Below are positions 1-27,010 of a stretch of 64,000 bases of DNA, in pieces. Origin of the DNA: Mizuhopecten yessoensis. Lineage: Eukaryota. Each line of letters begins with the position of its first letter. Within the stretch, counting starts at the first letter, position 1. Made by a program: the position numbers and the translations under genes. The stretch covers positions 58,638-122,637 of the forward strand of contig NW_018407439.1 in assembly GCF_002113885.1 (NCBI RefSeq), read 5' to 3'. The notes below the pieces were generated by a model. That model made no database searches. It had not been told where the DNA came from and was given only the letters and a program-made list of their open reading frames with translations.

Positions 1-1651
1 GACTGATAAGGATCTTTTAGCAAGCTCACAGATATAGCCAGCGGATGAAGTGATAGTCTACGACACGACTGATAAGGATGTTTTAGCAAGCTCACAGATA
101 AAGTCAGCGGATGAAGTGATAGTCAGGACTGATAAGGATCTTTTAGCAAGCTCACAAATATAGTCAGCGGATGAAGTGATAGTCTACGACAAGACTGATA
201 AGGATATTTTAGCAAGCTCACAGATATAGCCAGTGGATGAAGTGATAGTCTACGACAAGACTGATAAGGATCTTTTAGCAAGCTCACAGATATAGTCAGC
301 GGATGAAGTGATAGTCTACGACAAGAAACATAAGGATCTTTTAGCAAGCTCACAGATATAGCCCGCGGATGAAGTGATAGTCTACGACAGGACTGATAAG
401 GATGTTTTAGCAAGCTCACAGATAAAGTCAGCGGATGAAGTGATAGTCAGGACTGATAAGGATCTTTTAGCAAACTCACAAATATAGTCAGCGGATGAAG
501 TGATAGTCTACGACAAGACTGATAAGGATCGTTTAGCAAGGTCACAGATATAGTCAGCGGTGAAGTGATAATCTACGACAAGAAACATAAGGATCTTTTA
601 GCAAGCTCACAGATATAGCCAGCGGATGAAGTGATAGTCTACGACAGGACTGATAAGGATGTTTTAGCAAGCTCACAGATAAAGTCAGCGGATGAAGTGA
701 TAGTCAGGACTGATAAGGATCTTTTAGCAAGCTTACAAATATAGCCAGTGGATGAAGTGATAGTCTAGGACAAGACTGATAAGGATCTTTTAGCAAGCTC
801 ACATATATAGCCAGTGGATGAAGTGATAGTCTACGACAAGACTGATAAAGATCTTTTAGCAAGCTCACATATATAGTCAGCGGATGAAGTGATAGTCTAC
901 GACAAGACTGATAAGGATCGTTTAGCAAGGTCACAGATATAGTCAGCGGTGAAGTGATAATCTACGACAAGAAACATAAGGATCTTTTAGCAAGCTCACA
1001 GATATAGCCAGCGGATGAAGTGATAGTCTACGACAGGACTGATAAGGATGTTTTAGCAAGCTCACAGATAAAGTCAGCGGATGAAGTGATAGTCAGGACT
1101 GATAAGGATCTTTTAGCAAGCTCACAAATATAGTCAGCGGATGAAGTGATAGTCTACGACAAGACTGATAAGGATATTTTAGCAAGCTCACAGATATAGC
1201 CAGTGGATGAAGTGATAGTCTACGACAAGACTGATAAGGATCTTTTAGCAAGCTCACAGATATAGTCAGCGGATGAAGTGATAGTCTACGACAAGACTGA
1301 TAAGGATCTTTTAGCAAGCTCACAGATATAGTCAGCGGATGAAGTGATAGTCTACGACAAGACTGATAAGGATCTTTTAGCAAGCTCACAGATATAGTCA
1401 GCGGATGAAGTGATAGTCTACGACAAGACTGATAAGGATCTTTTAGCAAGCTCACAGATATAGCCAGCGGATGAAGTGATAGTCTACGACAAGACTGATA
1501 AGGATGTTTTAGCAAGCTCACAGATATAGCCAGCGGATGAAGTGATAGTCTACGACAGGACTGATAAGGATGTTTTAGCAAGCTCACAGATATAGCCAGC
1601 GGATGAAGTGATAGTCTACGACAGGACTGATAAGGATCTTTTAGCAAGCTC
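1..1651. repeat. 66-bp tandem array (about 25 units, runs off the window start) with recurring 60-bp deletion variants
   Basis: Unit GACTGATAAGGATCTTTTAGCAAGCTCACAGATATAGCCAGCGGATGAAGTGATAGTCTACGACAA; explains the 22-aa repeat ORFs. Confidence 0.97.
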
Positions 1652-2755
1652 TGCACTCTTTTATCCTTTTATATGTTGTATTCCCAGACTGTTATTTTAT
1701 ATCAAATTACGGTATTTTTTCCTAGTCAACGAATACATACCAGTATCCCATCTGTGTAACTTGCCTTTTAAAGAATGGAGATAAGAGTAAAATCGTGCTA
1801 CCACAAACATCTCTCAGTAATTGGGTTGGGCCCGTGGGTTTGTCAACTTCTGCGTCTGCACATGTCAGTCAATAGACACGACCTGCTACGGGGTTTTCCT
1901 AAACTCTGTTTCCAAGATATTCAGTTCCTCGTCAGTTGGAAGAATAACTTCCAGTCCATAAATAAATATCGCTTCTTTGTACAAGGATAGAGACCAGTTT
2001 GTCCTCATCAGACTGTACAAAGCTCTCCTTCCTTTAGTGAGGTTATCAATTGTAGTTGAAGAAGCTGTTTTATAGGGGGTTGGTTGTTGTTACATCAAAA
2101 TGATGTCCAAGTGGGTGGTTATTCGAGACGTACCGCCCTTCCTATACTGTATATCTGTCAGAAGTCTGTTGATAAACAGCTTGTTGTATAAGTTCGGTGC
2201 TAAGTGCAATGTATACTTGTAGTGAGTAGTTGTACCAATGCCTCTTCGCGTTAGCGTTTTCATCTTTGCTGATGTTTTGTAGAATCTCCCTTGTTTTCCG
2301 TTGAATTCCAATGTCAATGATCTATCTGTCTACAAATAGCTACGACCGATTGCAATATCAATATATAATTAAACTATATCAATATATAATTAAACTATAT
2401 CAATATATAATTAAATTAAAGACAAATTCAGAACGTGGTGTTTAATCACATTTTATTGCGGTAATCACAAGTATACTGTACACATGGAAGGGAAGATAAG
2501 AACTTATATTTAAATTGCTAAAACCATCAACAAAAACTCATAAATCCCTTACTTCTTTAACAACAAGTCAGATTTTTATTTTACTTTCTTATTTAGGAGA
2601 GGAGTGTATGAAAGAAGACAGAAATAATATCTGAAATGAGAAAACTGTTATCGATTATTAAAGAAAAATTACAAGCTCAAGAGAAAATTCTGTTTTTGGA
2701 CAGGCGAACACCTTACAAAGGTGAGGAGAGATGTTTAGCATAATGATTCAGAGGA

Positions 2756-10700: not shown

Positions 10701-13700
10701 ACAGTAAAAGGCAAGCTCCAAGAAATTGCAAACATATGCCAGCTCTATTGTCACTTTTAAATGTATAGAAAAGTAGTAAATATAATTGTAACATACCTGC
10801 CCTCAAACATGGCGGCCAGGTTGATGACGATGAACTCCTGACAGGCAGCCCGCAGTTGATGTGCATTGTAAACACAGGAAAACTCTAGGATCTCCGACAC
10901 GTTCTTCAGGTTAACTGGAAAACACAACAGTGAAAATTTTGATTTTCTTTTTCTCTTCTCTTTTTCTTGTTAAGGGTCTGGATGCAATTATTTTTTTCAT
11001 TACAAATGCTCTACCTAATTATGTAGAGAAACCTTTTATATGTGAAATAGAGAAAATTAAGATTAAACCTTACTGAGTGTGGTGATGGACACCTCACATA
11101 TCTCCTTTAGTCTGCTAATCAACAACTGGTCAGCTGACACCAGGATGTTACACAGGAACTCAGCGTTGACGCACTCTGTAAATAAATATTTAAACCTTTG
11201 TAAATTTATTACTGTTAGGTCATTATAATATTGATGTAAACCATAAAAGTGTTTAGTGTTAGAAACCATTATAATTTATGGCAATAAATTTATTAGAAAA
11301 TAAAATTGCATTTATTTTTAATAAGATCATCATGCCAATAGTAGAAAATTAAGACAAAATTCAAAGTCAATTGAAGTGTTACTGAATAGATGATATAATG
11401 CAAGGCAGAAATTAAAATTGACTGAAAAGGGGGCACTTTTATGAAGTGAGGATACTTTGTCTGGCAAAGATTAAATGCCATACCCACCTTCCACTTTAAC
11501 AGAGGAGTCTGTGTACAGAAAGTCTACGAGTATCACCAGTATGTCGCCAGAAACAGGTAGAGAGAGAGATTTTGTGTTGGATGTCTGAAATACAATTCAT
11601 CCAGGTCATCTACATACTTAAAATATGGTGCTTATGTCATAAACATTGTTTCAGGTCAAATTCATCAACACAAACATCATCTATAAACAAAATCAGATAA
11701 AGTTCACCCACATAAGTTTTAAACAGGATCAGGTCAAACTTGCTTTACACTATCAAACATCAATAATTAGTTCAGAATTTTTGGAAAATTCAAACAAGAA
11801 TCCTCGAAATTCTGTACTTAATGTGAAGTTTGTGAAAATGAGTTCAGGTTTGCATTACAATAACATGTGTTAAGCTATCAGAATTTCAAACCAAAATTCC
11901 GTAGTTAGATTACCTAAAAAAATATCAACCTTCAAATAAGACTTCAACTCAGCATTGTCAATAAAACTTTTTCTGTGAAGTCAGTTTTTGTAATCTTTGT
12001 CATCAAATAAAATAAATTAAGTTATTTAACAGCTTAAATAAGCAAGTAATTTCAATATCATGTCAAAGTCATTAGCAATAGATGCATACAAGTATATTTT
12101 TAACATGATTCTTTGGGAATTAGGATGATTGGATAAGGTGAAGTTACTGGCAGTCAACATCAGGAGATAAAAGATGTTCATTGTTCAGGCTACTTACCTC
12201 GACCCAGCCACTGCCTAGCATGCTGTGGAAGTACTCCAGTCTGGCCACTAACACACACTTGTGACAGTGGATCACTGTGTCACTGTCTGATTGGATACTA
12301 ACATCATACAGATCACATCTGTGGACAAAAACAATTTTACAATACATGGATAAGACTATCAATTACCTTGGTCATTTTCCTATGAATCTCACATGTTATT
12401 TCAATTAGAAAAAAACACACCTGATTTCTCCCTCTATTCAAAAATGTATTTGTACAGAGTGTTATTATGAAATAAGCCAGAGAAATATTAAAAGGTGGGC
12501 AGATCCCCCTTAACTATTGATGGTGGGAAGTATGTCCTTGATGTCACTACTGTATTAACACAATAATGAATTTACTCATGTTGGGGCAAGCGTCTCCCTA
12601 AATGACCTCTGTAGTGGTATAAGTGATATTTGAATTATTAAACTAGAGCTTTATCACATTGACCCTTACTGCAATGCAATCCGAGCTCACTATATTAACA
12701 ATTTCAAGAGACATTTAAAGTCTTAACTCACAACTTGTGTCTGTCAAACTTCATCTTTGGTACAGTGGAATGTTTCTTGGCCAGCTCAATTCCTCCATTC
12801 ACATACTTCACTGTCTCCAGTCTAAGTGTAACAAATAAAATAACAGCTTCAAAGTTACAAAAATAAGGAATAAAGAAATCTTAAATATTCTATGAATTTA
12901 AAACCTTCTTGATTTCAATAGTAGTTATTCTTGAAAATAAGAACTTTCAAAATTTTCAAAATGATTTTGTGCTGTTTCTGAAAAACACAAGTTTTGTACC
13001 TAATATATCCTAGAAATCCTGTTCATTGATTTACCTCTTCCCCAATCCTTTAACTCCAAATTTCTTGGCAGCATCCATCAGCATTTTGACAGGGTTCTTA
13101 GTTCTGGCCTTGTTGCCATTATCTTTGATCTCTTTACTGGCACTCTTCATTTTCTGACGAACCTCAAATGCTGACAACTCTTTCCCAGATTTGGAGAAGA
13201 AAATATCAGGACTGTCTCCCTTCTCCACCTCATTCCTGTCAAACCCGTCCCCCTGACCCTGAGGAGGGGGTGTCCATGGACTCAGGTCAAACTTTGTCCC
13301 CGGGGTAAGGAGGCTGCAGGTGTCAGTATACAGGAAGGTCAGTAATTGCTCAAATATATCTGGGTGTATATCATCAATATAGATAACCTGATGATCAGTT
13401 AATGAATCTTTCTTTTTGGACTCGGCCAGAAGTTTGTGGAAGTAGTCACTCCTGCTAAGTAGGATGTACTTATGGGCTGGCCATGTATGCCCACCTGCCT
13501 ATAAATAATGGAAACATTATTTTCACAATATGCCAAGATGATACAAATCTTATCTATATTCAGAGATCTGAGATAAGTTGCTCACTAACATAAGAACATG
13601 CAACATGAAATTGGTTAGATCGCCATGTTTTGGACAATTCGTGTCGGACCATTTCTCATGTGCAGAGATTCAGGTCATCTTAATGATAAAGATGTTTTGT

Positions 13701-16700: not shown

Positions 16701-19700
16701 TGTATCACACAATATGCTATAGGACTATAACTAATATGGTTCGCTTTTTTCTGTATTAATTAAATTTAACTACTCAGTAATAGCACAAAAGATTAGGCCC
16801 AAAAAATTTGATTACTTGGTTCTCAGGCCCGCGCGCATTTCATGGCAGTGTGCGCATTGCCGATTTTATCGTGAAAGTAATAAAAAAAAAATCGTGAATG
16901 CGCCAGCCGCCATCTTTAAAAAATAATCCAGAAAATTGGTCCGCATGTCATTTTTACTCGTTAGTCACCCAAGTGCCAAAAACGTTTGAATAAGGCTACA
17001 TTTGCGTATCCGGTTGAACCTGTAAAGAAAACGTCAGGTACAGATTTGGACCGAGGCTGACCTCAGGAAAATTTAGCACGTGTAGATTGAGGGGTCCAGA
17101 CGTACCTTACCGAAACTAAAAGGCTGACTATTGCCAATTTGCGTTATTTCTTAAACAATGTCAAGCCACATGTAATTTTTAAGATACGTTATGTAAATTA
17201 GTGGACGCGTGAGAGAAGGGCATAATATTCTTGATACATTGTTTTTTATTCTCCGAAACTGTACATTTTTAGCTCTGCTTATAGAACGGTCCAAGTATGT
17301 TCATTTATCGTGGAAAATTTCTGCGCAACACGTACCGTTTCAAACGGAATATGCGAATGTAGCCTAGATGTGAGGATTGAGATACAGGCAAGCATTAAAA
17401 TGATTATGACTTATTAGTCTTGTGTACAAATGGCACTCAATTCGGTACAAATAAGGAATGGGGGGTTCGTGATTCTAGTTTGGAACATTGTGGGGGGATT
17501 TTCGGATGCTTGCTCTATGACGGGTCTCTACACAACTATAAAAAGACAAGGTAATGTCCACAATGAACGTTTTACAAACTACACAATAAAAAAAAATCGC
17601 CCTCGTCTCGTTTTTGCCATGTAAAATGAAAAAACAATAACCCGCCCTGCCGCATCTATTTTGAAAAAAAATGGCCTGAGAAACAAGTAATTAATTTCAT
17701 TTGGCCTTACCCAGAATGTGTTTTAAAGCAGAGCCACTGTAACCTTGACATATGTGAATTATATTTGTACTTACTTGGAGGCTATTTTCCTACACTGGTA
17801 CTCGTGTATGACATACAGGTCACCCTTGCCTGTCAGAATAACGATGGCAGCATCAGAACTTGCTGCTAGACTTATCACCATGTCACTGTGATTGAGGGCG
17901 GCCACCAGCCTGGGCTGGCTCTGCTTCTCTGTACCCTTGGAGTGACCTTCAAATGAACAGTGTCAAAAACTGCACACTTATTACAGAATACACACTGCTT
18001 TTTATCATGTTAATTTAATTTCATTATTAAAAAAAAAAAAAAAAGTTTATTCTGGAGGGTTATATAATAATTAGTTTACTACCGGTATTTGGAGATTTCA
18101 GAGACCAAATATAAGACTTTGTGTTCTGAACATAAATCATTTATTAAACTTGGCCTATAAAATATCTTCTTCATTCTGGAATAAAATCTACAAAATAGGT
18201 GAATTTCGTTAACCTAAACTTGTTTAATAGTCCAGATATATAAAATTTGGTGATTTTTTTCTTGACAAAGCAGCATGGACTTTTAAAACAATGAATGAAA
18301 ATTTTGTAAGAATAAAGGTCAATAATATATTCAAGTTCATTTAAGAGTTGAGCTTCAACGAAGCTTTCCTAAATGTATTTATTACTAAAAGTGACACTTT
18401 TGGCTAGGTTGTATTTACTGGTAAGTAACTGACTTACCAAGTTGTCCTGCATTAAGTCCAAAAGTGAAAACAGAATCTGAGGTAAACATGGCAGTGTGGA
18501 AGCGACCAGCACACACACTCAGGATCGTCTTACTCTTGTGACTCTTGTTTGAGACCTGTGAAGAAATACATTGTTTATGTTGATAAAGCAGGCACAATAA
18601 ACGGTGTGTTCCAGTCACAGGCTAATTATTACAATACCTTTTTGTTTTAGCAGAATTTAAATCTTACAATGTAATTCTATTAAAATATTTTAAAGAAGTT
18701 TTATTAATATTTGGCCTGACAAGGGAATTGAGATTGAAACACACCTGCTTGGGAATCAAACTTTTCCCAGTAGAAGGCATTGGGAACTGTCCTAGCTGGT
18801 GGTTGTCATTCATTCCACAACTGTACACAGCACCACTGTCAATATAACACATACCACATGATAAATTTTGCAACTTTTCTAGAATGCAGAAGAGGTAGAG
18901 ACTGTCTTTTGTCAATTTCTGGCCAACCTATACCATAAGATAGGCTTAATATTATGAGCTTTGGAATGAAGTGTTTCTTAAATTTGTTTTTACAAATAAC
19001 TAAAAGAGGATTACAAAAGAATGTTTAAACCTTTGCATCAGAAGGACGGTGTGGTCTTGTCCTGCTGCTACTTGTGTACAAACTTCATCCTTGACAGCTT
19101 CCACAAGTCTTGGTACCTGTAATACAGCCAAGGAAATCATCCTGTACTATACAATATCATCAAAGCATGCTTATTATATATCCTTCAAAAACAGAGAATG
19201 AAAAAGGAACCATGCCATATCCATATTGAATACAGTACTACAGAATGCAAAGCTCACCATACAAACTCTAAGACCAAACAAAAATATTTCTTTTTTTTCT
19301 GGTAACCCTACATATCTGACTTTTTTGTGCCTAACCTAAACTTTTAAGGCAATTTTCAAAGAGACACTGTTAAATTCAAGGTCACTCTCCTGTATAAACC
19401 ACATAAAAATATTTTTTTAAATAAAATTAGTTTCCTAGCTATCAACCCTAAATATTTCAAACATGTTACAGAAAATTGTGCTTTTTTGTTTGGCCTAAGT
19501 CATGTCAAATCATTCAATAATGACAATACAAATTGTCCAGATTATATATTCAGTGATCAATTTGACAGCAACTGCAGACTTAAAATGAAAAGAAATATAA
19601 ATTTACATTGGAAATTGGCTTTATAACTGAGAACAGACAATAGATGATATCGCGACCAGTGGAACTCTTCAAATAGGAGGGGATTTAACTGTACTCGCTG

Positions 19701-21459
19701 GGGCAACAGATATATAAACAACATGGCAGCGCCAAAACATTCAGATACGAATTTCCACGAACTTCCATGTAATGAATTGGGTAATATTTTAAAGTCAAAA
19801 GGTATCACCTACTATAAATAAGAAAAAGGGGGAGCTAGTACACCTATGATAGCAAGCAGACATGTTAAATTGGCAAGATATTGAAAAGAGGACGAAGTTA
19901 AAGCGTCACAGCTGTGACGGACCGTCAGCGGCGTACAGAGTATCGTGTGTTACCTTTATGTAAATGAAATGTCAGAAGGCTTGTTTTGGACGAACAATTT
20001 GATTGGAATGTCATTACTAAATGCATTTGATGTGACCTCTATTCTTGTGAGTTATTTGTGTTGGTTCAATACAGTGAAGGTGTGTCATATTGTTTAGACA
20101 TGGCAGATTATTTTGCCCCCGTATCCTCGCATTCTCACGCGAGACTTGTGCATTTTCCGGCAAGAACACTTCGAAGGGGAGTAACTCGTGGATGGTCGCG
20201 ATAACAAGTATTGCAACAAAACAACTTACCACACACGTTTCCTCATCCCCATGGCCGAGTCGCCCTCCATGGCCGTGACCACAGCTGTATACCTGACCCG
20301 TCACTGTCAGGAACACTGTGTGATACTTACACAGAACCACCTGTAACATCAATAAACACAACAATGATTCAATAGAATTTGTGAACATGTATTATCATTG
20401 CTCTTCTAATCTGCAGTGCAGTGTAAATTTAGAAGTTACTTTTCAATCTATTCAGTTTATCAAACACACACATGCAGTGTCACTTTTTAATGAATTCACA
20501 TATCTTACATTTTTTACACTAATATTTTGCTTTCTGAAAATCTCCACAGCTTCTGGATAGGTCCGACGGTTTTCACTAGAATGTCCAAGGGTGATGTTGG
20601 AATTATCTCCCCATGTGAAAGTTTCAGTTGGATCTGAAAATGAAATGACATAGATGTCAATATTGCAATAGAATTGCTAGAAGCATGAGAAACTCAGGTT
20701 AAAAATCTCAATACCAATCAATGCATACCTGTGGATGAAAAGGAAACATAAACTGGTCGATCTTTGGACAGCAGGTCGAGTGGTCCTAGTCCCTCATTGT
20801 CTCTCGTGTACATGTCACTGTTGTACTGTCAAATTAGAACAAACATACATCAATTATACAACAATACATTTTGTATCTCAGCAAATCTGATAGACATACA
20901 TTTCATAAGTTTTCATATTATCATTCATAATTAAATGACTTTTTTTTACCTTGAAATATTCCAGTATCTTCAATTACTATGGTTGTCTTTAAAATGCCAT
21001 TTTACATATTTTGGAGTTTTGCCCCTTTTTTAAATAGAAAAAGGTTTGGGCATCAGAGTATCAACAATGACATAAACCAGAATCAAACACTTGAGTACTT
21101 TTACTTCATATATGTTACTGTCAGGTAGGATGTTTCACCTGGATAAGGAGTCGCATGGTAGCGAGATGTCCATAGAATGCAGCCCTGTGTAAAGCTGTCC
21201 AGCCTGACTCCATGTCTTTGGATGTGAGATCTCCATGCTTTTCATTTAACAACCATTCTGCGATGTCTATTTTACCACAGGCAGCAGCAACATGGAGCGG
21301 CCATCGTCCATAACTGTCGCAGAACTGAGTGGCAGAGTAACACAACTTGCTATATGCCTGGACCTCCTGTAGGTTTCCCTTCGTAACAGCGCAGAGAAAC
21401 TCCAGGGCATGTTGTCGCGACCGACATTTTGGGCCACATTCTGGCTCATATCCTGGCAT
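7628..21459 (-). CDS. IBTK: Inhibitor of Bruton tyrosine kinase (IBTK) ortholog, spliced CDS span (24 coding exons, 4152 nt, 1383 aa)
   Basis: Manual exon assembly with GT-AG ends and matching phases throughout. N-terminus CGPKCRSRQHAL...KDMESGWTALHRAAFYGH (ankyrin), RCC1 repeats (GQVYSCGHGHGGRLGHG, CAGRFHT), two BTB domains (AHKYILLSRSDYF; CHKCVLVARLEYF) and C-terminus IQIEEQAIQELLVYY...PLW all match the IBTK family as I recall it. Confidence 0.96.
8185..8407 (-). CDS. IBTK: IBTK coding exon 23
   Basis: WGIPTG...NPWTK...SFTDIVKDEEQRFETLAKLARKPLGLIQ|GTAGGT; 223 nt. Confidence 0.9.
8643..8789 (-). CDS. IBTK: IBTK coding exon 22
   Basis: GDVNTTVKPFRDLMSED...PTV|GTAATG; 147 nt. Confidence 0.85.
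9100..9258 (-). CDS. IBTK: IBTK coding exon 21
   Basis: IKSPIKSSSKFSWKEAKK...PACP(W)|GTAAAC; 159 nt. Confidence 0.85.
9604..9983 (-). CDS. IBTK: IBTK coding exon 20 (low complexity)
   Basis: ttcag|SPVEDSK...SLREIMEEENR|GTAGGG; 380 nt; phases fit. Confidence 0.86.
10256..10640 (-). CDS. IBTK: IBTK coding exon 19
   Basis: HLDVLSDDVLAGLTTYY...MSRRIVTPYFDGP...TEAVQ|GTACTA; 385 nt. Confidence 0.88.
10797..10914 (-). CDS. IBTK: IBTK coding exon 18 (BACK-like)
   Basis: NLKNVSEILEFSCVYNAHQLRAACQEFIVINLAAMFEG|GTATGT; 118 nt. Confidence 0.92.
11074..11175 (-). CDS. IBTK: IBTK coding exon 17
   Basis: CVNAEFLCNILVSADQLLISRLKEICEVSITTL|GTAAGG; 102 nt. Confidence 0.92.
11488..11584 (-). CDS. IBTK: IBTK coding exon 16 (BTB2)
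   Basis: TSNTKSLSLPVSGDILVILVDFLYTDSSVKVE|GTGGGT; 97 nt. Confidence 0.9.
12198..12318 (-). CDS. IBTK: IBTK coding exon 15 (BTB2)
   Basis: CDLYDVSIQSDSDTVIHCHKCVLVARLEYFHSMLGSGWVE|GTAAGT; 121 nt. Confidence 0.94.
12732..12821 (-). CDS. IBTK: IBTK coding exon 14
   Basis: LETVKYVNGGIELAKKHSTVPKMKFDRHK; TT|GTGAGT; 90 nt. Confidence 0.88.
13035..13498 (-). CDS. IBTK: IBTK coding exon 13 (BTB1)
   Basis: AGGHTWPAHKYILLSRSDYF...HPDIFEQLLTFLYTDTC...NPVKMLMDAAKKFGVKGL; 464 nt. Confidence 0.93.
13856..13961 (-). CDS. IBTK: IBTK coding exon 12
   Basis: VTDVPCVSSSTFIEDFTQLLDEADEYDVIHDIVIQ|GTAAGC; 106 nt; acceptor is A-rich but is the only one in phase. Confidence 0.85.
14525..14714 (-). CDS. IBTK: IBTK coding exon 11
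   Basis: ERGRGHG...RIPQIHRGLFIQTDIKGRNYAVQQALVNL; TG|GTAGGA; 190 nt. Confidence 0.85.
14872..15120. repeat. 49-bp intronic minisatellite (about 5 units)
   Basis: GCAGAATTCATGATTGATTTTAGTCGGAATAATTGTGTGTATGTATTAT repeated. Confidence 0.9.
15241..15264 (-). CDS. IBTK: Candidate 24-nt cassette microexon of IBTK (VLTRLNSK)
   Basis: atttatag|TCCTAACCAGGCTGAACAGTAAAA|GTGAGT; symmetric phase 1, no stop, lies in a phase-1 intron. Confidence 0.5.
15899..16100 (-). CDS. IBTK: IBTK coding exon 10 (alternative in-frame donor extends it to 15875)
   Basis: VLIWRASLPKLRQCQWRIRRQLIVKDVSL...GEGFLG...; two AAAG|GTAAA donors 24 nt apart. Confidence 0.85.
16432..16555 (-). CDS. IBTK: IBTK coding exon 9
   Basis: LQEVTKLLISGGNLDHNTDLDIIREEGGSELVVVLLSESGS|GTAAGT; 124 nt. 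Confidence 0.9.
16796..17706. mobile_element. PIF/Harbinger (Tourist-like) MITE in an IBTK intron
   Basis: About 35-bp TIRs GGCCCAAAAAATTTGATTACTTGGTTCTCAGGCC / GGCCTGAGAAACAAGTAATTAATTTCATTTGGCC, with TTA on both flanks (TSD). Confidence 0.8.
16994..17364. mobile_element. Second PIF/Harbinger-type MITE nested inside the first
   Basis: TIRs GGCTACATTTGCGTATCCGGTTGAA / TTCAAACGGAATATGCGAATGTAGCC; flanks TAA / TAG. Confidence 0.7.
17775..17946 (-). CDS. IBTK: IBTK coding exon 8
   Basis: GHSKGTEKQSQPRLVAALNH...AASSDAAI...EYQCRKIAS|GTAAGT; 172 nt. Confidence 0.92.
18438..18555 (-). CDS. IBTK: IBTK coding exon 7 (RCC1)
   Basis: VSNKSHKSKTILSVCAGRFHTAMFTSDSVFTFGLNAGQL|GTAAGT; 118 nt. Confidence 0.92.
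18745..18835 (-). CDS. IBTK: IBTK coding exon 6 (RCC1)
   Basis: SGAVYSCGMNDNHQLGQ...IPKQ|GTGTGT; 91 nt. Confidence 0.9.
19031..19116 (-). CDS. IBTK: IBTK coding exon 5 (RCC1)
   Basis: VPRLVEAVKDEVCTQVAAGQDHTVLLMQ; weak donor AG|GTTTAA but phase fits; 86 nt. Confidence 0.88.
19272..19495. mobile_element. Short Harbinger-type MITE
   Basis: TAA|GACCAAACAAAAA ... TTTTTTGTTTGGCC|TAA. Confidence 0.6.
20230..20340 (-). CDS. IBTK: IBTK coding exon 4 (RCC1)
   Basis: VVLCKYHTVFLTVTGQVYSCGHGHGGRLGHGDEETCV|GTAAGT; 111 nt. Confidence 0.94.
20509..20633 (-). CDS. IBTK: IBTK coding exon 3 (RCC1)
   Basis: DPTETFTWGDNSNITLGH...ISVKN|GTAAGA; 125 nt. Confidence 0.92.
20729..20825 (-). CDS. IBTK: IBTK coding exon 2
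   Basis: gacag|YNSDMYTRDNEGLGPLDLLSKDRPVYVSFSST|GTATGC; 97 nt. Confidence 0.92.
21139..21459 (-). CDS. IBTK: IBTK coding exon 1 (ATG, ankyrin repeats)
   Basis: MPGYEPECGPKCRSRQH...LLIQ; donor CAG|GTGAAA; 321 nt, phase 0. Confidence 0.93.
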
Positions 21460-21758
21460 TCTGCAGGTGTCTTCATAAATCTTTTAAGATTTTATACAAT
21501 ATTTATTTTTCTCTTAGTTCACTCTAGTGTATTTACTGTCTTAATATTTTATATCAATAAGGCAAAGTTAATTTTCTCTGCAACCTTGACACCTTTCTTT
21601 TCTTTGCCCTTAATGCTGAGACTTGTTACCTGGACAACATTTGACTACAATTAAAGCTGCCTGGATCTGTAGCTGGATACCAGCCAGATTAATGGATGCC
21701 CATGATAGGGCAGCCATCACAAGGTTTCTTCTTAAACAGCCATAATTGTATTCTACAC
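21460..21758 (-). promoter_or_regulatory. IBTK 5' leader (non-coding part of the ATG exon) containing five uORF starts
   Basis: Acceptor tttctaacttcag at 21760-21759, with no usable acceptor nearer the ATG. ATGs at 21743 (MAV*), 21717 (35 aa), 21703 (MGIH*), 21640 (MLSR*) and 21476 (69 aa, overlaps the CDS). Confidence 0.7.
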
Positions 21759-22915
21759 CTGAAGTTAGAAACGTTAGTTAGAACAATCCATGATAAAAAT
21801 ATATATAATATACACACTTTAAAATGTCCATCATAAGTATACAAGTAAAATTAAAGCTTCAGCATGTTCACATGTTCTATATTCACACATCGAATGGTTC
21901 CCGTCAGAAAATAGTTGTCAAAACATTTCATTGTTCAGTCTGACATTCTGGTTCAAGTTTTAGGCATGTACTACTAATATAATGAGATAGTGTCATGTTA
22001 TTAAAACTTACAGCACTTTACCAATCTACATTTTGCTTCATCATATCTTACTGTTGAATATATAGTCAAATACATATCATGTTTAATTGTTTATGGTCAG
22101 ATGCATGTGATAATTACATGTAGGTCACTGCACCTTACTATCCTTTGCCCTTGGTCAGACTGAACAATATTTGATATTGGTGCTAAAATTAGGTGACTAA
22201 ATTTGATATTTTTGCTCTAACAAAAAAACTATACATGTGCAAATTTACTTTCCCAAAAGCCTCCAATATATGGGTATATTGCACATACATGTACAAACAA
22301 GTAAGCTAGTCTCTATTAGCTGACAATGTTTGTTCTTTTTTTTTACATGATTTATTAGAGCAGAAATAATAAGCATCCATTAATCCTATTGGTATATATA
22401 TGATGAAAAGATAATAGGGAAAATTGATCCAGAGGTTGACCACGTTACACTGTTTTAGGATGAAATGACAAAACTTGTGGCAAGCATAATGCACACCTTA
22501 CGAGAGTTTGCATTGTAAAGCCTGCCATTTTTTGCAAATAATTCATCACTTTTCGACAATTGTTTTGCATATGAGACTTTATCAGAGTCTAGCAGTTTAT
22601 GAGTGACCCGAACTTTGTTGTTTTACTCCAATACGAATCGTAATTCGCTGATTGCATAACGTTCAGAAATTGTCGGCCTTACAGGATATATTTATTCGAA
22701 CATACATTTTTCTTACAATGATTGAAAATATTTTTCGTTTGTTCTAAAATGTCATGAAAAATTGCGTTGACCACTTAAGAAAGTTTACATACGTGTAGAA
22801 CCACGGAATTAGATTCGTGGTAGAACGTGATACTGATATAGCCGGGAAAGCACTGCATCATCAAAGATAGGTTTTGCATCGAAATATATATTTTATAAAA
22901 ATATCAGTCATTCAC

Positions 22916-23060
22916 CTGGATTAAATTGCAATGGAGTAGAAAAAGAAGCAGACAAATTTTCCTAAAATCGCAACAACACTGGAAGACATCCTAGATTAGT
23001 AAATATGTTCAATGACAGACGATGCCCTCATTTTTGCCAACTCCGCGAACATGAAGATTA
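22916..23060 (-). promoter_or_regulatory. Candidate non-coding first exon / promoter of IBTK
   Basis: Locally CpG-enriched. Donor CAG|GTGAAT at 22916/22915, with an alternative C|GTATGT at 22793/22792. Contains two more short ORFs (23031-22996, 22989-22921). TSS not visible. Confidence 0.35.
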
Positions 23061-26000
23061 TAATCTCTAAACCACTTTCAATTGAAGTATTGTTGGGGTT
23101 TAATAAAAACATAAAATTGATTTAATATTTTTATTGCATAAATTGAATTAAAATGTATAACATAGATGTATTTTTGGGAGTTTAGATATCGTAACCAAAG
23201 TTAAATTTATCAACTATATAATGGTGTAGAGAGTAAAATTACAACAAAATTAGTAAAAGTGGACAAACCGTAGTGTATTTTCCGGAACGGAATGAAACAT
23301 ATATTTTAAAATGTTTTATCTGTATTTTATCTGTTTATATTCACAGTTGAATATCTCCATCATTATAATAATATTACATAATGAACACTTAATTAAAACT
23401 AAAATATTAATAGGATAATACTATTTCCATTTGAATGCAATCCGGATCACATCTTGCTGTATTCGTTTATCATCATATTTATTACTCTCTACTTTCATTT
23501 TTCGATGGCTTATTGCGGCCTGAAGAAAAAAGTTGTTTTGGAGGGAACTTTTTGGTAATAATTGAAAAACCTTGGAGTAGGCCTAACATTTCTATAGTAA
23601 AACAATCATTTTTTAGAAAATGAAAGATTGCTCGTATCCAAAGTTGAAAATATGCAGGGGACATAATCGTTATATGGGGAAAATTAGTTGAGAGAGCAAG
23701 AAAATGCCATTGTTTTAGATCTCAAAACGGGACAGAAGGGGACAATCATTTGTAGGAAAATATCCCCAAAAAATGTCATGCAATGCAAAGAAATAGTGCT
23801 ATATATGCAATTTTCACTAAATGATACATCTATGTCAATTAATTAGTGTATCAGCTTTATTAGCTGCTGATTATGTGGACGGTTCTAAAGTCGAAAATGG
23901 GCCGAATTAAAAAAAAAACGTTCTTAACTGTGTCCTGGGAAGGTATTCATTTGGGTATCATTTTCAAAAGTCTTTTTTTTCTCAAAACTAACGCTATTTT
24001 GGAGAAGAAATTTAATAAGAACATCCGTTGACCCTAAAATATTTGAACGACATTTAATTAACACCTCTTCAAGGGCATACGTTACCGTGCCAGTATTTTG
24101 CATTTCAAATTCTAGAACCATTTGTGGAAATATCAATTTGTAACCAAAAAGTGGATGGTATGAATTCTTAAAAAGTGAACCAATTTTCTTGAAATTAATA
24201 CTATATGGTTGATAAAATTCGTGGAAACAATTGACTAATGAAAACTTTTCAGTTTTGAGTACTGGCTTTGGTAGATAGCAATCTAATCTAATTCTGTGGT
24301 TTAACCTAATTTGTAAATTAATTAACAATTTACAAGTGAAAAATATCAGATACATATATTTATCCACCATTAGGAGCCTATTTTATGTTTTTTTAAACAA
24401 ATACAAATGTACACAATTGACCTTAAATGACAGACCAGCAAATCTGCATGACCTGTGACCAGAGATTCTGGACTGCAAAAGGTCAACAAAAGATAATCAT
24501 GAAAAGAGCCTGAGAGAATTGTGATCAGTTTGAAGAACAGTGTCATTATTAAAAGTTTTTGGCTTTTTCTAGATATACTAGAGATTGTTTAAAGATTTTT
24601 TCTTTTCAATTTTATTGCAAAGGATTGGTTGGATTTTTAGATTTTACTTCTAAGTAATCTGAAGTTATAAATCTCGAGAGTTTTCATTGGTGATAATCAC
24701 TCTGTATGGCCATTTTCTTGATTCTGTAAGAGGTTTTTAATAGGATGCAGCAAGCCAAAAAATTACCTTTTCTAGGTAAAAATTAGAAAAAGGAATTGGG
24801 ATGACTTAATTTAGGAAAATTATCTTTGGTTATGCAATAAATCCTGAATTTATTGGTTCTGTATCAGTAGCAGATGAAAGTTTTTCCAGATGTCTGCTTA
24901 CTTCTGAATGAACTTCTTTTTGTACATTAAAGTTAGAACTTAAAATTTCCTTCTTTTAACAAATTACTGAAGTTATTAAAAAATGTTCAAGTCATCCGTA
25001 TTGCATAATTAGTTTTTATGGTGATCGGGAATATAAACATGTAAATATAGTTAAAAGTAAACTGAAACCTTGATTATTGCCTAAATTGTTTAAAAATTAA
25101 CTTTTCTTCAACTTTGTACTTAAACCAAGGAGTAATTATTCTAGATTTTTAATTAAGATCATTAACTCTCTCTCAATTAAAATCCATAACCCTGAAAGAC
25201 TTCCAGAAAATATTAGGATAGACTAGCTGACAGATAAATATAATTGGGATATGAAATATTCACCTTGTTATACATATTTTCTACTATTTTCTGTATAGTT
25301 ATATATATAAGGATTGGCTGACAGATAACTAATAGGGATATGAAATATTCACCTTTTAAATGTATTCTATTATTTTTTGTATAGTTTTGCTTTTTATTTA
25401 TTTCTCTTGAAGCAGTTTATGTTTGACTTTGTGTGATCTTCTATGTTGCCAGCAGCTAATTCAATGAGTGAATCATGAATTAATAGAATCTTCCCCTACC
25501 CTGAGGGTGTGACAGAGAAATCTCCAACCCGAGGGGTGATGTTTTTAGGTTGTCTAACCCAACCAAAAATATCACCATTAATTGGTACGAGGAAGCAATA
25601 TATGTAAGCTGTAACTGATAATAATCATCAGACATTTTGTGACATTGATAAATAAGATTTGCATGTCCTTATAGTAAAGTATATATTTTATTCGGGAAAC
25701 TCAACAATCATGTGTATAAATGAAATTATTTTAATCCTGTTTTTTCTAGCATTGTTGTAATCTTAGTTAGCTAGGCCGCTGAGAAAAAAAAAGTTTTTTC
25801 CACTTTTGGCTCTGAACAAATTAGGGAAGGAAGGAAACCATGTTTTTGATGCAAATAGATAGCAGAATCGCACGAGCAGTACTGTAACCCTTTGATTATT
25901 GTGCAATTAACAAGTAAAATCCTGTTATACCATGTTTAATGCTTATATTGCACGATGGTTTTATTTTTGTTGTATTTGTAGCACTGGAATAAGATGTGAG

Positions 26001-26182
26001 GTTATACTAGACGGTGGATGCTTTCTTATTGTACAGCTATACTGGACACCTGTGTTTTTTATGAACAGGGAGTGTCTTTGATGGAATAGTAACATATACT
26101 TCATTCAGAAGTATGGTCAAGACATATGATGAATTTTACATACTTTTGGTCCAAGTATTTTTATTTTATTTTTATTACCCTA

Positions 26183-27010
26183 TTTTTTAGCCCACCATCA
26201 TCTGATGGTGGGCTATTCAAATCACCCTGCGTCAGTGGTCTGTCGTCCGTCCGTTGTCCGTCGTCCGTTGTCTGTCGTCCGTCCGTAAACATTTCTTTGT
26301 TATCGGTATTTCTCAAGAAGTACCAGAGGGATCTTTCTCAAATTTTATATGCAGGTTCCCCTTGGTCCTTAGCTGTGCAGGGCAACTTTTGAGACTGATC
26401 GTTTAAACAACATGGCCAACAGGCAGCCATCTTTGATTTTGATATTGAAAGTTTGTTACCGCTATTTCTCCGGAAGAACTAGAGGGATCTTTCTTAAATT
26501 TTATATGTAGGTTCCCCTTGGTCCTAGCTGTGCAGGGCAATTTTAGAGACTGATTGGATAAACAACAAGGCTGACAGGCAGCCATCTTGGATTTTGATAG
26601 TGAAAGTTTGTTATCGCTATTTATCGGGAAGTACGGGAGGGATCTTTCTCAAATTTTAAATGTAGGTTCCCCTTGATCCCTCGTTGTGTATGTTATATTT
26701 TGAGACTGATCATAAAAACAAAATGGAATAAAAGAAGAACTAAACAGATCTTTCTCATTGCAATGATCGATTCTATTTCTTTCACATTAAGTACTGTACT
26801 AGTCAATATGTGAAATGACAAACTCACTTTGAAGGTTGGCTTTCATACACATCAGTATTAAGTTTAGATCAAAAGTTACCTCAAGGTGCATTTACTGTTA
26901 ACATGACTCAATCAAACAGATTAGAGGAAAGAAGAGAAAAGATTGAACTGACAAAGAACTAATGAAGATGGTACAGAGGTGGGCGCCAAGATCCCTCTGG
27001 GATCTCTTGT
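26183..27010 (+). mobile_element. Complete HINE (non-autonomous Helentron) with an internal 156-bp tandem array (about 2.7 units)
   Basis: T-run, AGCCCACCATC-atct-GATGGTGGGCT hairpin, (CGTC)n microsatellite, 156-bp repeats, GTGGGC subTIR and terminal palindrome CAAGATCCCTCTGGGATCTCTTG. Confidence 0.85.

What the first reader, a model, noticed from the sequence alone, without database searches (positions are those of the whole stretch)
21267..21758. ATF4-like uORF switch in an invertebrate IBTK leader
Seen: the 299-nt leader in the ATG exon has five upstream ATGs. These give a 3-codon uORF (MAV*, 21743-21732), a 35-aa uORF (21717-21610), two 4-codon uORFs (21703, 21640) and an ATG 17 nt before the main start that runs out of frame 69 codons, ending at 21267 inside the CDS. 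Known: a short reinitiation-permissive uORF plus an overlapping inhibitory uORF is the ATF4 delayed-reinitiation design, and mammalian IBTK-alpha is preferentially translated under eIF2-alpha phosphorylation through leader uORFs. Inference: integrated-stress-response control of IBTK may be ancient across bilaterians, or convergent, and active in a mollusc.
Basis: partly seen in the sequence, partly recalled or inferred. Interest (0 to 1): 0.75.

Follow-up and report, generated by a model that had tools for sequence, protein, structure and literature searches.

The report
IBTK three-codon uORF plus hairpin

Summary
All five upstream ATGs sit where stated. Spliced transcript contigs from three studies show that 21139-21758 is one exon whose whole 299-nt leader stays in the mRNA. 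The number of uATGs is no higher than chance.

Only one part is conserved. It is the three-codon uORF (21743-21732), which lies 15 nt after the splice acceptor in a strong start context and is followed 12-14 nt later by a GC-rich hairpin (21717-21692). I found the same layout in 12 other lineages: 10 invertebrate contigs, a teleost and a non-human mammal-like contig. They carry at least six unrelated hairpin sequences.

This matches the published human IBTK-alpha uORF2/stem-loop module (Amin, Carlson and Wek 2022; conservation shown there for mammals only). That module blocks reinitiation and is bypassed under eIF2-alpha phosphorylation.

The out-of-frame overlapping uORF that the ATF4 analogy needs is present in only 3 of 8 invertebrate leaders, always in weak context.

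Verdict: ancient stress-type control of IBTK is supported by comparison, through the known IBTK mechanism rather than the ATF4 one. Function in molluscs is untested.

The parts
22916..23057 (-). Exon 1, non-coding. The 5' end is a minimum: contigs stop at 23036-23057.
   Evidence: Spliced contigs of X1, X2 and X4 join 22913/6 to 21755/8. The donor CAG|GT at 22916/22915 is visible.
22921..22989 (-). Exon-1 uORF of 22 codons plus stop (context A at -3). In the spliced RNA its stop lies 20 nt before the three-codon uORF's AUG, so it is the positional analogue of the mammalian positive-acting uORF1.
   Evidence: The analogy to uORF1 is an inference from PMC9971878.
22996..23052 (-). Exon-1 uORF of 18 codons plus stop (weak context, with an in-frame ATG at 23031). 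It may lie at or before the true transcription start.
21759..22915 (-). Intron 1 (GT..AG, 1157 nt).
   Evidence: Joint 21755>22913 (cut +3) in three runs.
21139..21758 (-). Exon 2, made of the 299-nt leader plus the first 107 codons of IBTK (ankyrin repeats).
21732..21743 (-). Conserved three-codon uORF (MAV-stop). It lies 15 nt after the acceptor, in the context AUU-AUG-G.
   Evidence: Present at the same place in 13 of 13 module-bearing lineages.
21718..21731 (-). Spacer between the stop codon and the hairpin. It is 14 nt to the core stem, or 12 nt to the extended stem.
21692..21717 (-). Hairpin SL1. It has 9 bp with one C-U mismatch and a 6-nt loop. Energy is -13.6 kcal/mol for the core and -17.7 when extended. 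Its 5' arm contains the ATG at 21717 and its loop/3' arm the ATG at 21703.
   Evidence: The motif occurs once in the 988-Mb genome.
21672..21684 (-). Second small hairpin (5 bp, 3-nt loop, -5.5 kcal/mol). It is conserved only in the clade that shares the SL1 sequence.
21610..21717 (-). 35-codon uORF. Its length and peptide are not conserved: relatives that share the same AUG have 27, 4 and 4 codons.
21689..21703 (-). Four-codon uORF. It is a by-product of the hairpin sequence, and the ATG is absent in L004.
21626..21640 (-). Four-codon uORF, not conserved.
21267..21476 (-). 69-codon out-of-frame uORF overlapping the coding sequence (weak context, U at -3). An equivalent is present in only 3 of 8 invertebrate leaders.
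21139..21459 (-). Start of the IBTK coding sequence (main ATG at 21459, A at -3).
   Evidence: Ank domains. Orthologous exons share 61-67% identity.

Best explanation
The functional core of this leader is a two-part translational brake homologous to the mammalian IBTK-alpha uORF2/stem-loop module. It consists of a well-contexted three-codon uORF at the very start of exon 2 and a GC-rich hairpin 12-14 nt behind its stop codon.

The following points are shown. The leader is in the mature mRNA. The uORF's position, its length of exactly three codons and its start context are invariant in 13 lineages, while its codons and its stop codon vary. A stable hairpin follows in all but one or two of them, and it is built from at least six unrelated sequences.

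The following steps are inferred from the mammalian experiments. Scanning ribosomes start at this uORF and terminate after three codons, at which point the hairpin sits at the mRNA entry channel. The hairpin prevents the post-termination 40S subunit from resuming scanning, so IBTK synthesis is low. Ribosomes that have first translated the exon-1 uORF, which ends 20 nt upstream, cannot reload initiator tRNA in time. They skip the brake, all the more when eIF2-alpha is phosphorylated, and reach the main AUG about 270 nt further on. The other uATGs of exon 2 are lineage-specific extras, like the human uORF3 and uORF4.
For: IBTK identity rests on Ank, RCC1 in four downstream exon ORFs and two BTB domains, relatives named IBTK by a source, and a Danionella protein with RCC1.

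The module appears in the window, L001, L003, L004, L005, L007, L009, L011, L013, L014, L093, fish L010 and mammal-like L016. The distance from acceptor to AUG is 14-17 nt, A is always at -3, G is at +4 in 11 of 13, and the peptide has three residues in 13 of 13.

Hairpin energies run from -13.5 to -23.6 kcal/mol, with at least six sequence classes. G-rich and C-rich arms are swapped between vertebrates and molluscs.

Among 133 three-codon strings in the window, this one has the strongest downstream hairpin, and only 4 of 133 reach -14. The hairpin motif is unique in the genome.

L016 has MEF-stop, a 12-nt spacer and a 29-nt hairpin of -22.4 kcal/mol, 329 nt before the ATG. This fits the published human description: a three-residue uORF2 in optimal context, a 29-nt stem-loop of -20 kcal/mol 11 nt downstream, an upstream positive uORF1 and dispensable uORF3/4 (PMC9971878).
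Against: There is no functional or ribosome-profiling data for any mollusc. The scallop hairpin core (-13.6 kcal/mol) is weaker than the human stem-loop (-20). Dinucleotide-shuffle tests on single species are weak for L001, L003, L009, L014 and the fish (p 0.1-0.47). Within the scallop's own clade the stem is sequence-invariant, so the structure is argued only from comparison between clades. The module was not found near the ATG exon in L008, L012, L015, L018-L022 or the annelid-like contigs L023-L044; it may lie in unsampled exons or have been lost. Exon starts in the relatives are predicted from acceptor consensus only. Conservation of the exon-1 uORF could not be tested.
Confidence: 0.72

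Rival explanations
1. This is the first reader's model of ATF4/GCN4-type delayed reinitiation. The three-codon uORF is a positive, reinitiation-permissive element. The out-of-frame uORF starting at 21476 captures quickly reloaded ribosomes and blocks the main AUG. Stress delays reloading, so ribosomes skip that uORF.
For: Both elements exist in the window. ATF4's uORF1 is also three codons long (own knowledge). Overlapping uORFs also occur in L004 and L011.
Against: The overlapping uORF is absent in 5 of 8 invertebrate leaders, and L007 has no uATG other than the three-codon one. Its context is weak, with U at -3, and it lies only 17 nt from a better-contexted main AUG. Exon 1 places three uATGs ahead of MAV. 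A conserved hairpin follows the short uORF, and in mammalian tests that same element turned ATF4 uORF1 from permissive to non-permissive (PMC9971878). Baird et al. state that IBTK-alpha control differs from ATF4 control.
Confidence: 0.1
2. The conserved block at the start of exon 2 serves something other than translation. It could be a splicing enhancer or acceptor-definition element, a DNA-level regulatory site in intron 1/exon 2, or a hairpin bound by a protein for mRNA stability or localisation. On this view the three-codon frame is incidental.
For: The block abuts a conserved intron position, and the bases just before the AUG (CAAUU) are conserved as sequence.
Against: The conserved features are the AUG, an in-frame stop exactly three codons later (UAA, UAG and UGA are all used) and A-3/G+4, while codons 2-3 vary. 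That is the signature of a translated minimal uORF. Hairpin sequence is free while pairing is kept, which argues against a sequence-specific DNA or protein site. The mammalian counterpart has been shown experimentally to act in translation (PMC9971878).
Confidence: 0.08
3. The uATGs carry no regulatory meaning. They are what an AT-rich 299-nt leader gives by chance, and IBTK is translated by leaky scanning.
For: The uATG count is at or below the shuffle expectation. Four of the five exon-2 uATGs are not conserved as ORFs.
Against: The first uORF and the hairpin are conserved across phyla in leaders that otherwise cannot be aligned. The hairpin ranks first of 133 in the window.
Confidence: 0.05

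Closest known systems
Human/mouse IBTK-alpha uORF2 plus stem-loop translational control element (Amin, Carlson and Wek, J Biol Chem 2022, PMC9971878; Baird et al., Mol Biol Cell 2014, PMC4019499)
   Same: It lies in the orthologous gene. It has a three-residue uORF in strong context, a GC-rich hairpin about 11-15 nt after the stop, a further uORF just upstream, variable and apparently dispensable uORFs downstream, and a long leader. A mammal-like contig and a fish show the module at the start of an exon with nearly the same bases before the AUG as in the molluscs.
   Different: The scallop hairpin is weaker (-13.6 to -17.7 against -20 kcal/mol). It carries an AUG in its 5' arm, which opens a 35-codon uORF. 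A second small hairpin follows it. In molluscs the module shares an exon with the main ATG, whereas in the fish it lies in a separate small exon. The literature I could search reports conservation for mammals and vertebrates only. No functional data exist here.
ATF4/ATF5/GCN4 delayed-reinitiation leaders
   Same: A short three-codon uORF upstream and, in this species, an out-of-frame uORF overlapping the coding start.
   Different: The short uORF is followed by a conserved hairpin expected to block reinitiation. The overlapping uORF is not conserved and is weakly contexted. The short uORF is not 5'-proximal.
CHOP and GADD34 single inhibitory-uORF bypass leaders
   Same: An inhibitory uORF that is thought to be bypassed when eIF2-alpha is phosphorylated.
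   Different: In those leaders inhibition comes from the encoded peptide or from termination context. Here the peptide is free to vary, and the inhibitory partner is an RNA structure.

Membership tests
IBTK-alpha uORF2/stem-loop module | The host gene is the IBTK orthologue (ankyrin repeats, RCC1 repeats, two BTB domains). | tested here: met
   Ank in exon 2. RCC1 in four and BTB in two downstream exon ORFs. N-terminal exon relatives include one named IBTK by a source and a Danionella Ank-RCC1 protein.
IBTK-alpha uORF2/stem-loop module | A uORF encoding only three residues, with a strong start context, lies in the mature 5' leader. | tested here: met
   MAV-stop at 21743-21732 with A at -3 and G at +4. 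The leader is retained in spliced contigs from three studies.
IBTK-alpha uORF2/stem-loop module | A stem-loop of moderate stability (about -20 kcal/mol) lies about 11 nt downstream of that uORF's stop. | tested here: met
   The hairpin at 21717-21692 starts 12-14 nt after the stop. Its energy is -13.6 (core) to -17.7 (extended) kcal/mol, somewhat weaker than the human one. It ranks 1 of 133 in the window.
IBTK-alpha uORF2/stem-loop module | The uORF and the stem-loop are conserved phylogenetically. | tested here: met
   Thirteen lineages including a fish and a mammal-like contig carry them, with at least six hairpin sequence classes.
IBTK-alpha uORF2/stem-loop module | A modestly translated uORF1 lies close upstream and antagonises uORF2. 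| tested here: inconclusive
   The exon-1 uORF 22989-22921 ends 20 nt before the AUG in the spliced RNA. Its translation and its conservation could not be tested.
IBTK-alpha uORF2/stem-loop module | The uORF and stem-loop together block reinitiation, and the block is relieved by eIF2-alpha phosphorylation. | not testable with these tools
   This needs reporters, ribosome profiling or polysome profiles in mollusc cells.
ATF4/GCN4-type delayed reinitiation | A 5'-proximal short uORF allows efficient reinitiation. | tested here: not met
   Three uATGs in exon 1 precede it. It is followed by the conserved hairpin, which in mammals abolishes reinitiation even when transplanted behind ATF4 uORF1 (PMC9971878).
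ATF4/GCN4-type delayed reinitiation | An inhibitory uORF overlaps the coding sequence out of frame and is kept by selection. | tested here: not met
   It is present in the window (21476-21267) but occurs in only 3 of 8 invertebrate leaders, always with U at -3.

The most novel reading that the evidence does not exclude
The three-codon uORF plus hairpin, together with the intron position just before it, is a bilaterian-ancestral translational switch that has been kept on IBTK for more than half a billion years. That would make IBTK, beside ATF4/GCN4, one of the oldest cis-encoded targets of eIF2-alpha signalling. The natural replacement of the hairpin by unrelated sequences at a fixed 11-15 nt spacing would then be an evolutionary experiment showing that only structure and distance matter for blocking reinitiation.
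Probability: 0.55. Interest if true: 0.7.

Novelty: new member of a known kind. Interest (0 to 1): 0.6.

Why it matters
The uORF2/stem-loop mechanism was worked out only in human cells, and its conservation was shown only among mammals. Finding the same layout in many molluscs, a fish and a mammal-like contig, with the hairpin sequence replaced several times, has three consequences. First, it is strong comparative evidence that a 'short uORF plus nearby hairpin' is a real, selectable way of stopping reinitiation. Second, it suggests that stress-tuned dosing of IBTK, a CUL3 adaptor acting on translation factors, is an old and important part of the integrated stress response. Third, it supplies a set of natural variants in hairpin sequence, stability and spacing that can be put straight into reporter assays. 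It also shows that counting uATGs in one leader can suggest the wrong mechanism, and that comparison across species picked out the one uATG that is conserved.

Tried and rejected
- uATG enrichment: rejected. The counts are 5 against an expected 7.3, and 8 against an expected 10 when exon 1 is included.
- Splicing-out of the leader at the donor-like site near 21629: no contig shows it, although contigs can miss rare isoforms.
- A conserved uORF2 peptide: rejected. The AUG at 21717 opens frames of 35, 27, 4 and 4 codons in species that share the hairpin.
- The hairpin as a genomic repeat: rejected. It occurs once in 988 Mb.
- A known RNA family: none found in Rfam.
- MAFFT/RNAalifold-style covariation on all 12 modules: not pursued. 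The hairpins are too different to align column by column, so I tabulated pairs by rank from the loop instead.
- Three-codon strings with hairpins just before the ATG in the annelid-like contigs L031, L032 and L044: rejected. They lie out of frame inside an acidic N-terminal extension of the coding sequence.
- The scan's notes near this place: blank.
Full report
**Observation.** The main ATG is at 21459. Coordinates, lengths and the 17-nt offset are all correct.

**Transcript evidence.** One search found 20 runs holding the exon. I laid four of them, from four studies, on 20801-26800.
- Contigs of X1 (3804 nt), X2 and X4 cover 21139-21755 without interruption.
- These contigs skip 1157 nt to 22913-23057 (GT..AG on the minus strand, with a cut ambiguity of 3, so the intron is 21759-22915).
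- All four runs also skip 20826-21138.

Contigs that lack both introns must come from spliced RNA. X10 is an RNA library by its record. Exon 2 is therefore exactly 21139-21758, and the whole 299-nt leader is retained in the dominant assembled form. The donor-like site near 21629 is not used in any contig, though contigs can miss rare isoforms.

It carries uATGs at 23052 (18 codons, weak context), 23031 (in frame with the first) and 22989 (22 codons, A at -3). The last of these stops at 22923-22921, which is 20 nt before the MAV AUG in the spliced RNA. Low-depth X10 contigs inside intron 1 look like unspliced RNA or DNA carry-over.

**Gene identity.** I scanned exon ORFs one by one and searched no joined model.
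- Exon 2 gives ankyrin repeats.
- ORFs at 20455-20676, 20020-20391, 18667-18927 and 18418-18621 give RCC1.
- ORFs at 13034-13498 and 12147-12362 give BTB.

Ank-RCC1-BTB-BTB is the IBTK architecture. Relatives of the first coding exon include a JGI protein named inhibitor of Bruton tyrosine kinase and a Danionella Ank-RCC1 protein. Earlier notes of this scan call the genome a scallop. I did not test that.

**Chance.** Five ATGs in 299 nt is below the dinucleotide-shuffle mean of 7.3. With exon 1 added inside a script, eight are observed against an expected 10. The number of uATGs is therefore not a signal.

**Comparison with relatives.** I obtained genomic contigs encoding the orthologous first coding exon (52-67% protein identity) by the word search, by exact look-ups and by one metagenome scan. 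Apart from one block the leaders cannot be aligned.

That block is found in the window, L001, L003, L004, L005, L007 (identical in L006), L009, L011, L013, L014 and L093. In each of these:
- a pyrimidine-rich acceptor is followed 14-17 nt later by an AUG;
- A at -3 is invariant, G at +4 occurs in all but L009 and L093, and most have CAAUU before the AUG;
- there are exactly two further sense codons and a stop.

The peptides are MAV, MAF, MAI, MAL, MEC, MDC, MCA, MAC, MDC, MDV and MRF, and all three stop codons are used. L007 has no other uATG at all in its 167-nt leader. The other leaders have between 1 and 8 more, at unrelated places.

**The hairpin.** A GC-rich hairpin follows the stop codon, with its core usually 11-15 nt downstream.
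- The window, L001, L003 and L004 share one sequence: a 9-11 bp stem with a C-U mismatch.
- L014 and L093 carry variants with a different 3' arm.
- L007 and L013 share a second sequence (10-13 bp, -16.3 and -22.5 kcal/mol).
- L005 has a third (7 bp, -14.7).
- L011 has a fourth (18 bp, -23.6).
- L009 is weak or ambiguous.

Tabulated from the loop outward, each of the first seven pair positions shows two to six different canonical pair types across lineages.

In the window, 133 strings have the form ATG-two sense codons-stop. The IBTK one has the most stable downstream hairpin (-17.7 kcal/mol), and only 4 of the 133 reach -14. Per-species shuffle tests are strong for the window, L004, L005, L007, L011, L013 and L016, and weak for L001, L003, L009, L014 and the fish. 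The scallop hairpin motif occurs once in the 988-Mb assembly and matches no Rfam family.

**Vertebrates.** In the Danionella contig L010 the coding exon has an acceptor 12 nt before the ATG. About 960 nt upstream lies a small exon-like segment with an acceptor, 15 nt, MED-stop in a strong context, a 15-nt spacer and a 10-bp hairpin, followed by a donor.

L016 and L017 encode an N-terminus 58% identical to the fish. It differs at about ten of its first 60 residues from human IBTK as I remember that sequence, so I take these contigs for a non-human mammal. L016 has an acceptor, 15 nt, MEF-stop, a 12-nt spacer and a perfect 12-bp, 29-nt hairpin of -22.4 kcal/mol, 329 nt before the ATG. The bases before the AUG (UUGCAAUU-AUGGA) are nearly the same in L016, L007 and L014.

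**Link to the literature.** Amin, Carlson and Wek (PMC9971878) report the following for human IBTK-alpha.
- uORF2 encodes a three-residue peptide in optimal context.
- A 29-nt stem-loop of -20 kcal/mol lies 11 nt downstream of it.
- The two together prevent reinitiation at the coding sequence.
- Moving the stem-loop 50 nt away, or deleting it, derepresses translation.
- A heterologous stem-loop of equal stability substitutes for it.
- uORF3 and uORF4 are dispensable.

Conservation is shown there for six mammals. Baird et al. (PMC4019499) say the uORFs are conserved among mammals/vertebrates and that the mechanism differs from that of ATF4. In the library I could search, no paper mentions the module outside vertebrates.

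**Mechanism proposed for the scallop.** The structural facts above are shown. The following steps are inferred.
1. Ribosomes that scan past the exon-1 uATGs initiate at 21743 and terminate three codons later, with the hairpin at the entry of the mRNA channel.
2. The post-termination 40S fails to resume scanning, so basal IBTK synthesis is low.
3. Ribosomes that translated the exon-1 uORF ending 20 nt upstream lack a ternary complex when they pass 21743, more so when eIF2-alpha is phosphorylated.
4. These ribosomes melt the moderate hairpin while scanning and reload over the roughly 270 nt before 21459.

The AUGs at 21717 and 21703 lie inside the hairpin and are conserved only as part of its sequence. 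The AUGs at 21640 and 21476 are lineage-specific.

**The ATF4 analogy.** An out-of-frame uORF overlapping the coding start occurs in the window, L004 and L011 only, each time with U at -3. MAV is not 5'-proximal. The element behind MAV is the one that, when transplanted in mammalian tests, made ATF4 uORF1 non-permissive. I therefore keep the ATF4 reading only as a minor, species-specific possibility.

**Limits.**
- The module was not found within the available upstream sequence of L008, L012, L015 and L018-L022.
- It was also not found in the annelid-like contigs L023-L044, whose coding sequence has an acidic N-terminal extension. I cannot tell loss from relocation to an unsampled exon.
- Exon starts in the relatives rest on acceptor consensus, not on RNA.
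- Taxon names of most contigs are unknown.
- I did not fetch protein hits of vertebrate type with many Logan contigs (for example P0077), because they could be human. I used no human sequence.
- The single N in the window was left alone.
- I searched no spliced joined model. The only joined string was exon 1 plus the leader, used inside a script to count ATGs.

**Novelty and verdict.** This is a new member of a known kind. The known IBTK-alpha uORF2/stem-loop element is extended from mammals to a teleost and to many molluscs, with natural hairpin replacements that support the structure. The evolutionary inference is supported by comparison. The proposed ATF4-like mechanism is not.

Noticed in passing
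window 25479-25562 and 26184-26800: Short contig pieces pile up at very high summed depth (hundreds to tens of thousands) in all four runs, with many loose ends and internal joints. This looks like a highly repeated, transcribed element (a transposon or satellite) upstream of IBTK exon 1.
   Followed up: no
window 126-1668 (minus-strand frames): Long open frames consist of a repeating unit of about 24 residues (…LSLHPLAISVSLLKHPYQSCRR…), which points to a tandem DNA repeat at the low end of the window.
   Followed up: no
L005 2200-2290 and 2720-2800: The start of exon 2, with the three-codon uORF and the hairpin, is duplicated about 500 nt upstream. The distal copy has a G-to-A change that weakens the hairpin (-9.6 against -16.8 kcal/mol).
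   Followed up: partly
L008 2680-2860: A GGTGGTTTG-type minisatellite lies directly upstream of the IBTK ATG exon in this relative, which lacks the module nearby.
   Followed up: no
window 21828-22046 and 22378-22942: Low-depth X10 contigs lie inside intron 1, and one runs across the exon-1 donor. This could be unspliced pre-mRNA, intron retention or DNA carry-over in the metatranscriptome.
   Followed up: no
L023-L044 (e.g. L032 2440-2510): Annelid-like IBTK first exons encode an acidic N-terminal extension (MDDVEDDEE…) ahead of the conserved MDC…C.S start. The extension is absent in the molluscs and vertebrates.
   Followed up: partly
window 21672-21684; L001 356-368; L003 440-452: A second, 13-nt hairpin (GCUGG-NAU-CCAGC) lies 7-18 nt behind the main hairpin. 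It is conserved only in the clade that shares the scallop hairpin sequence, and its role is unknown.
   Followed up: partly
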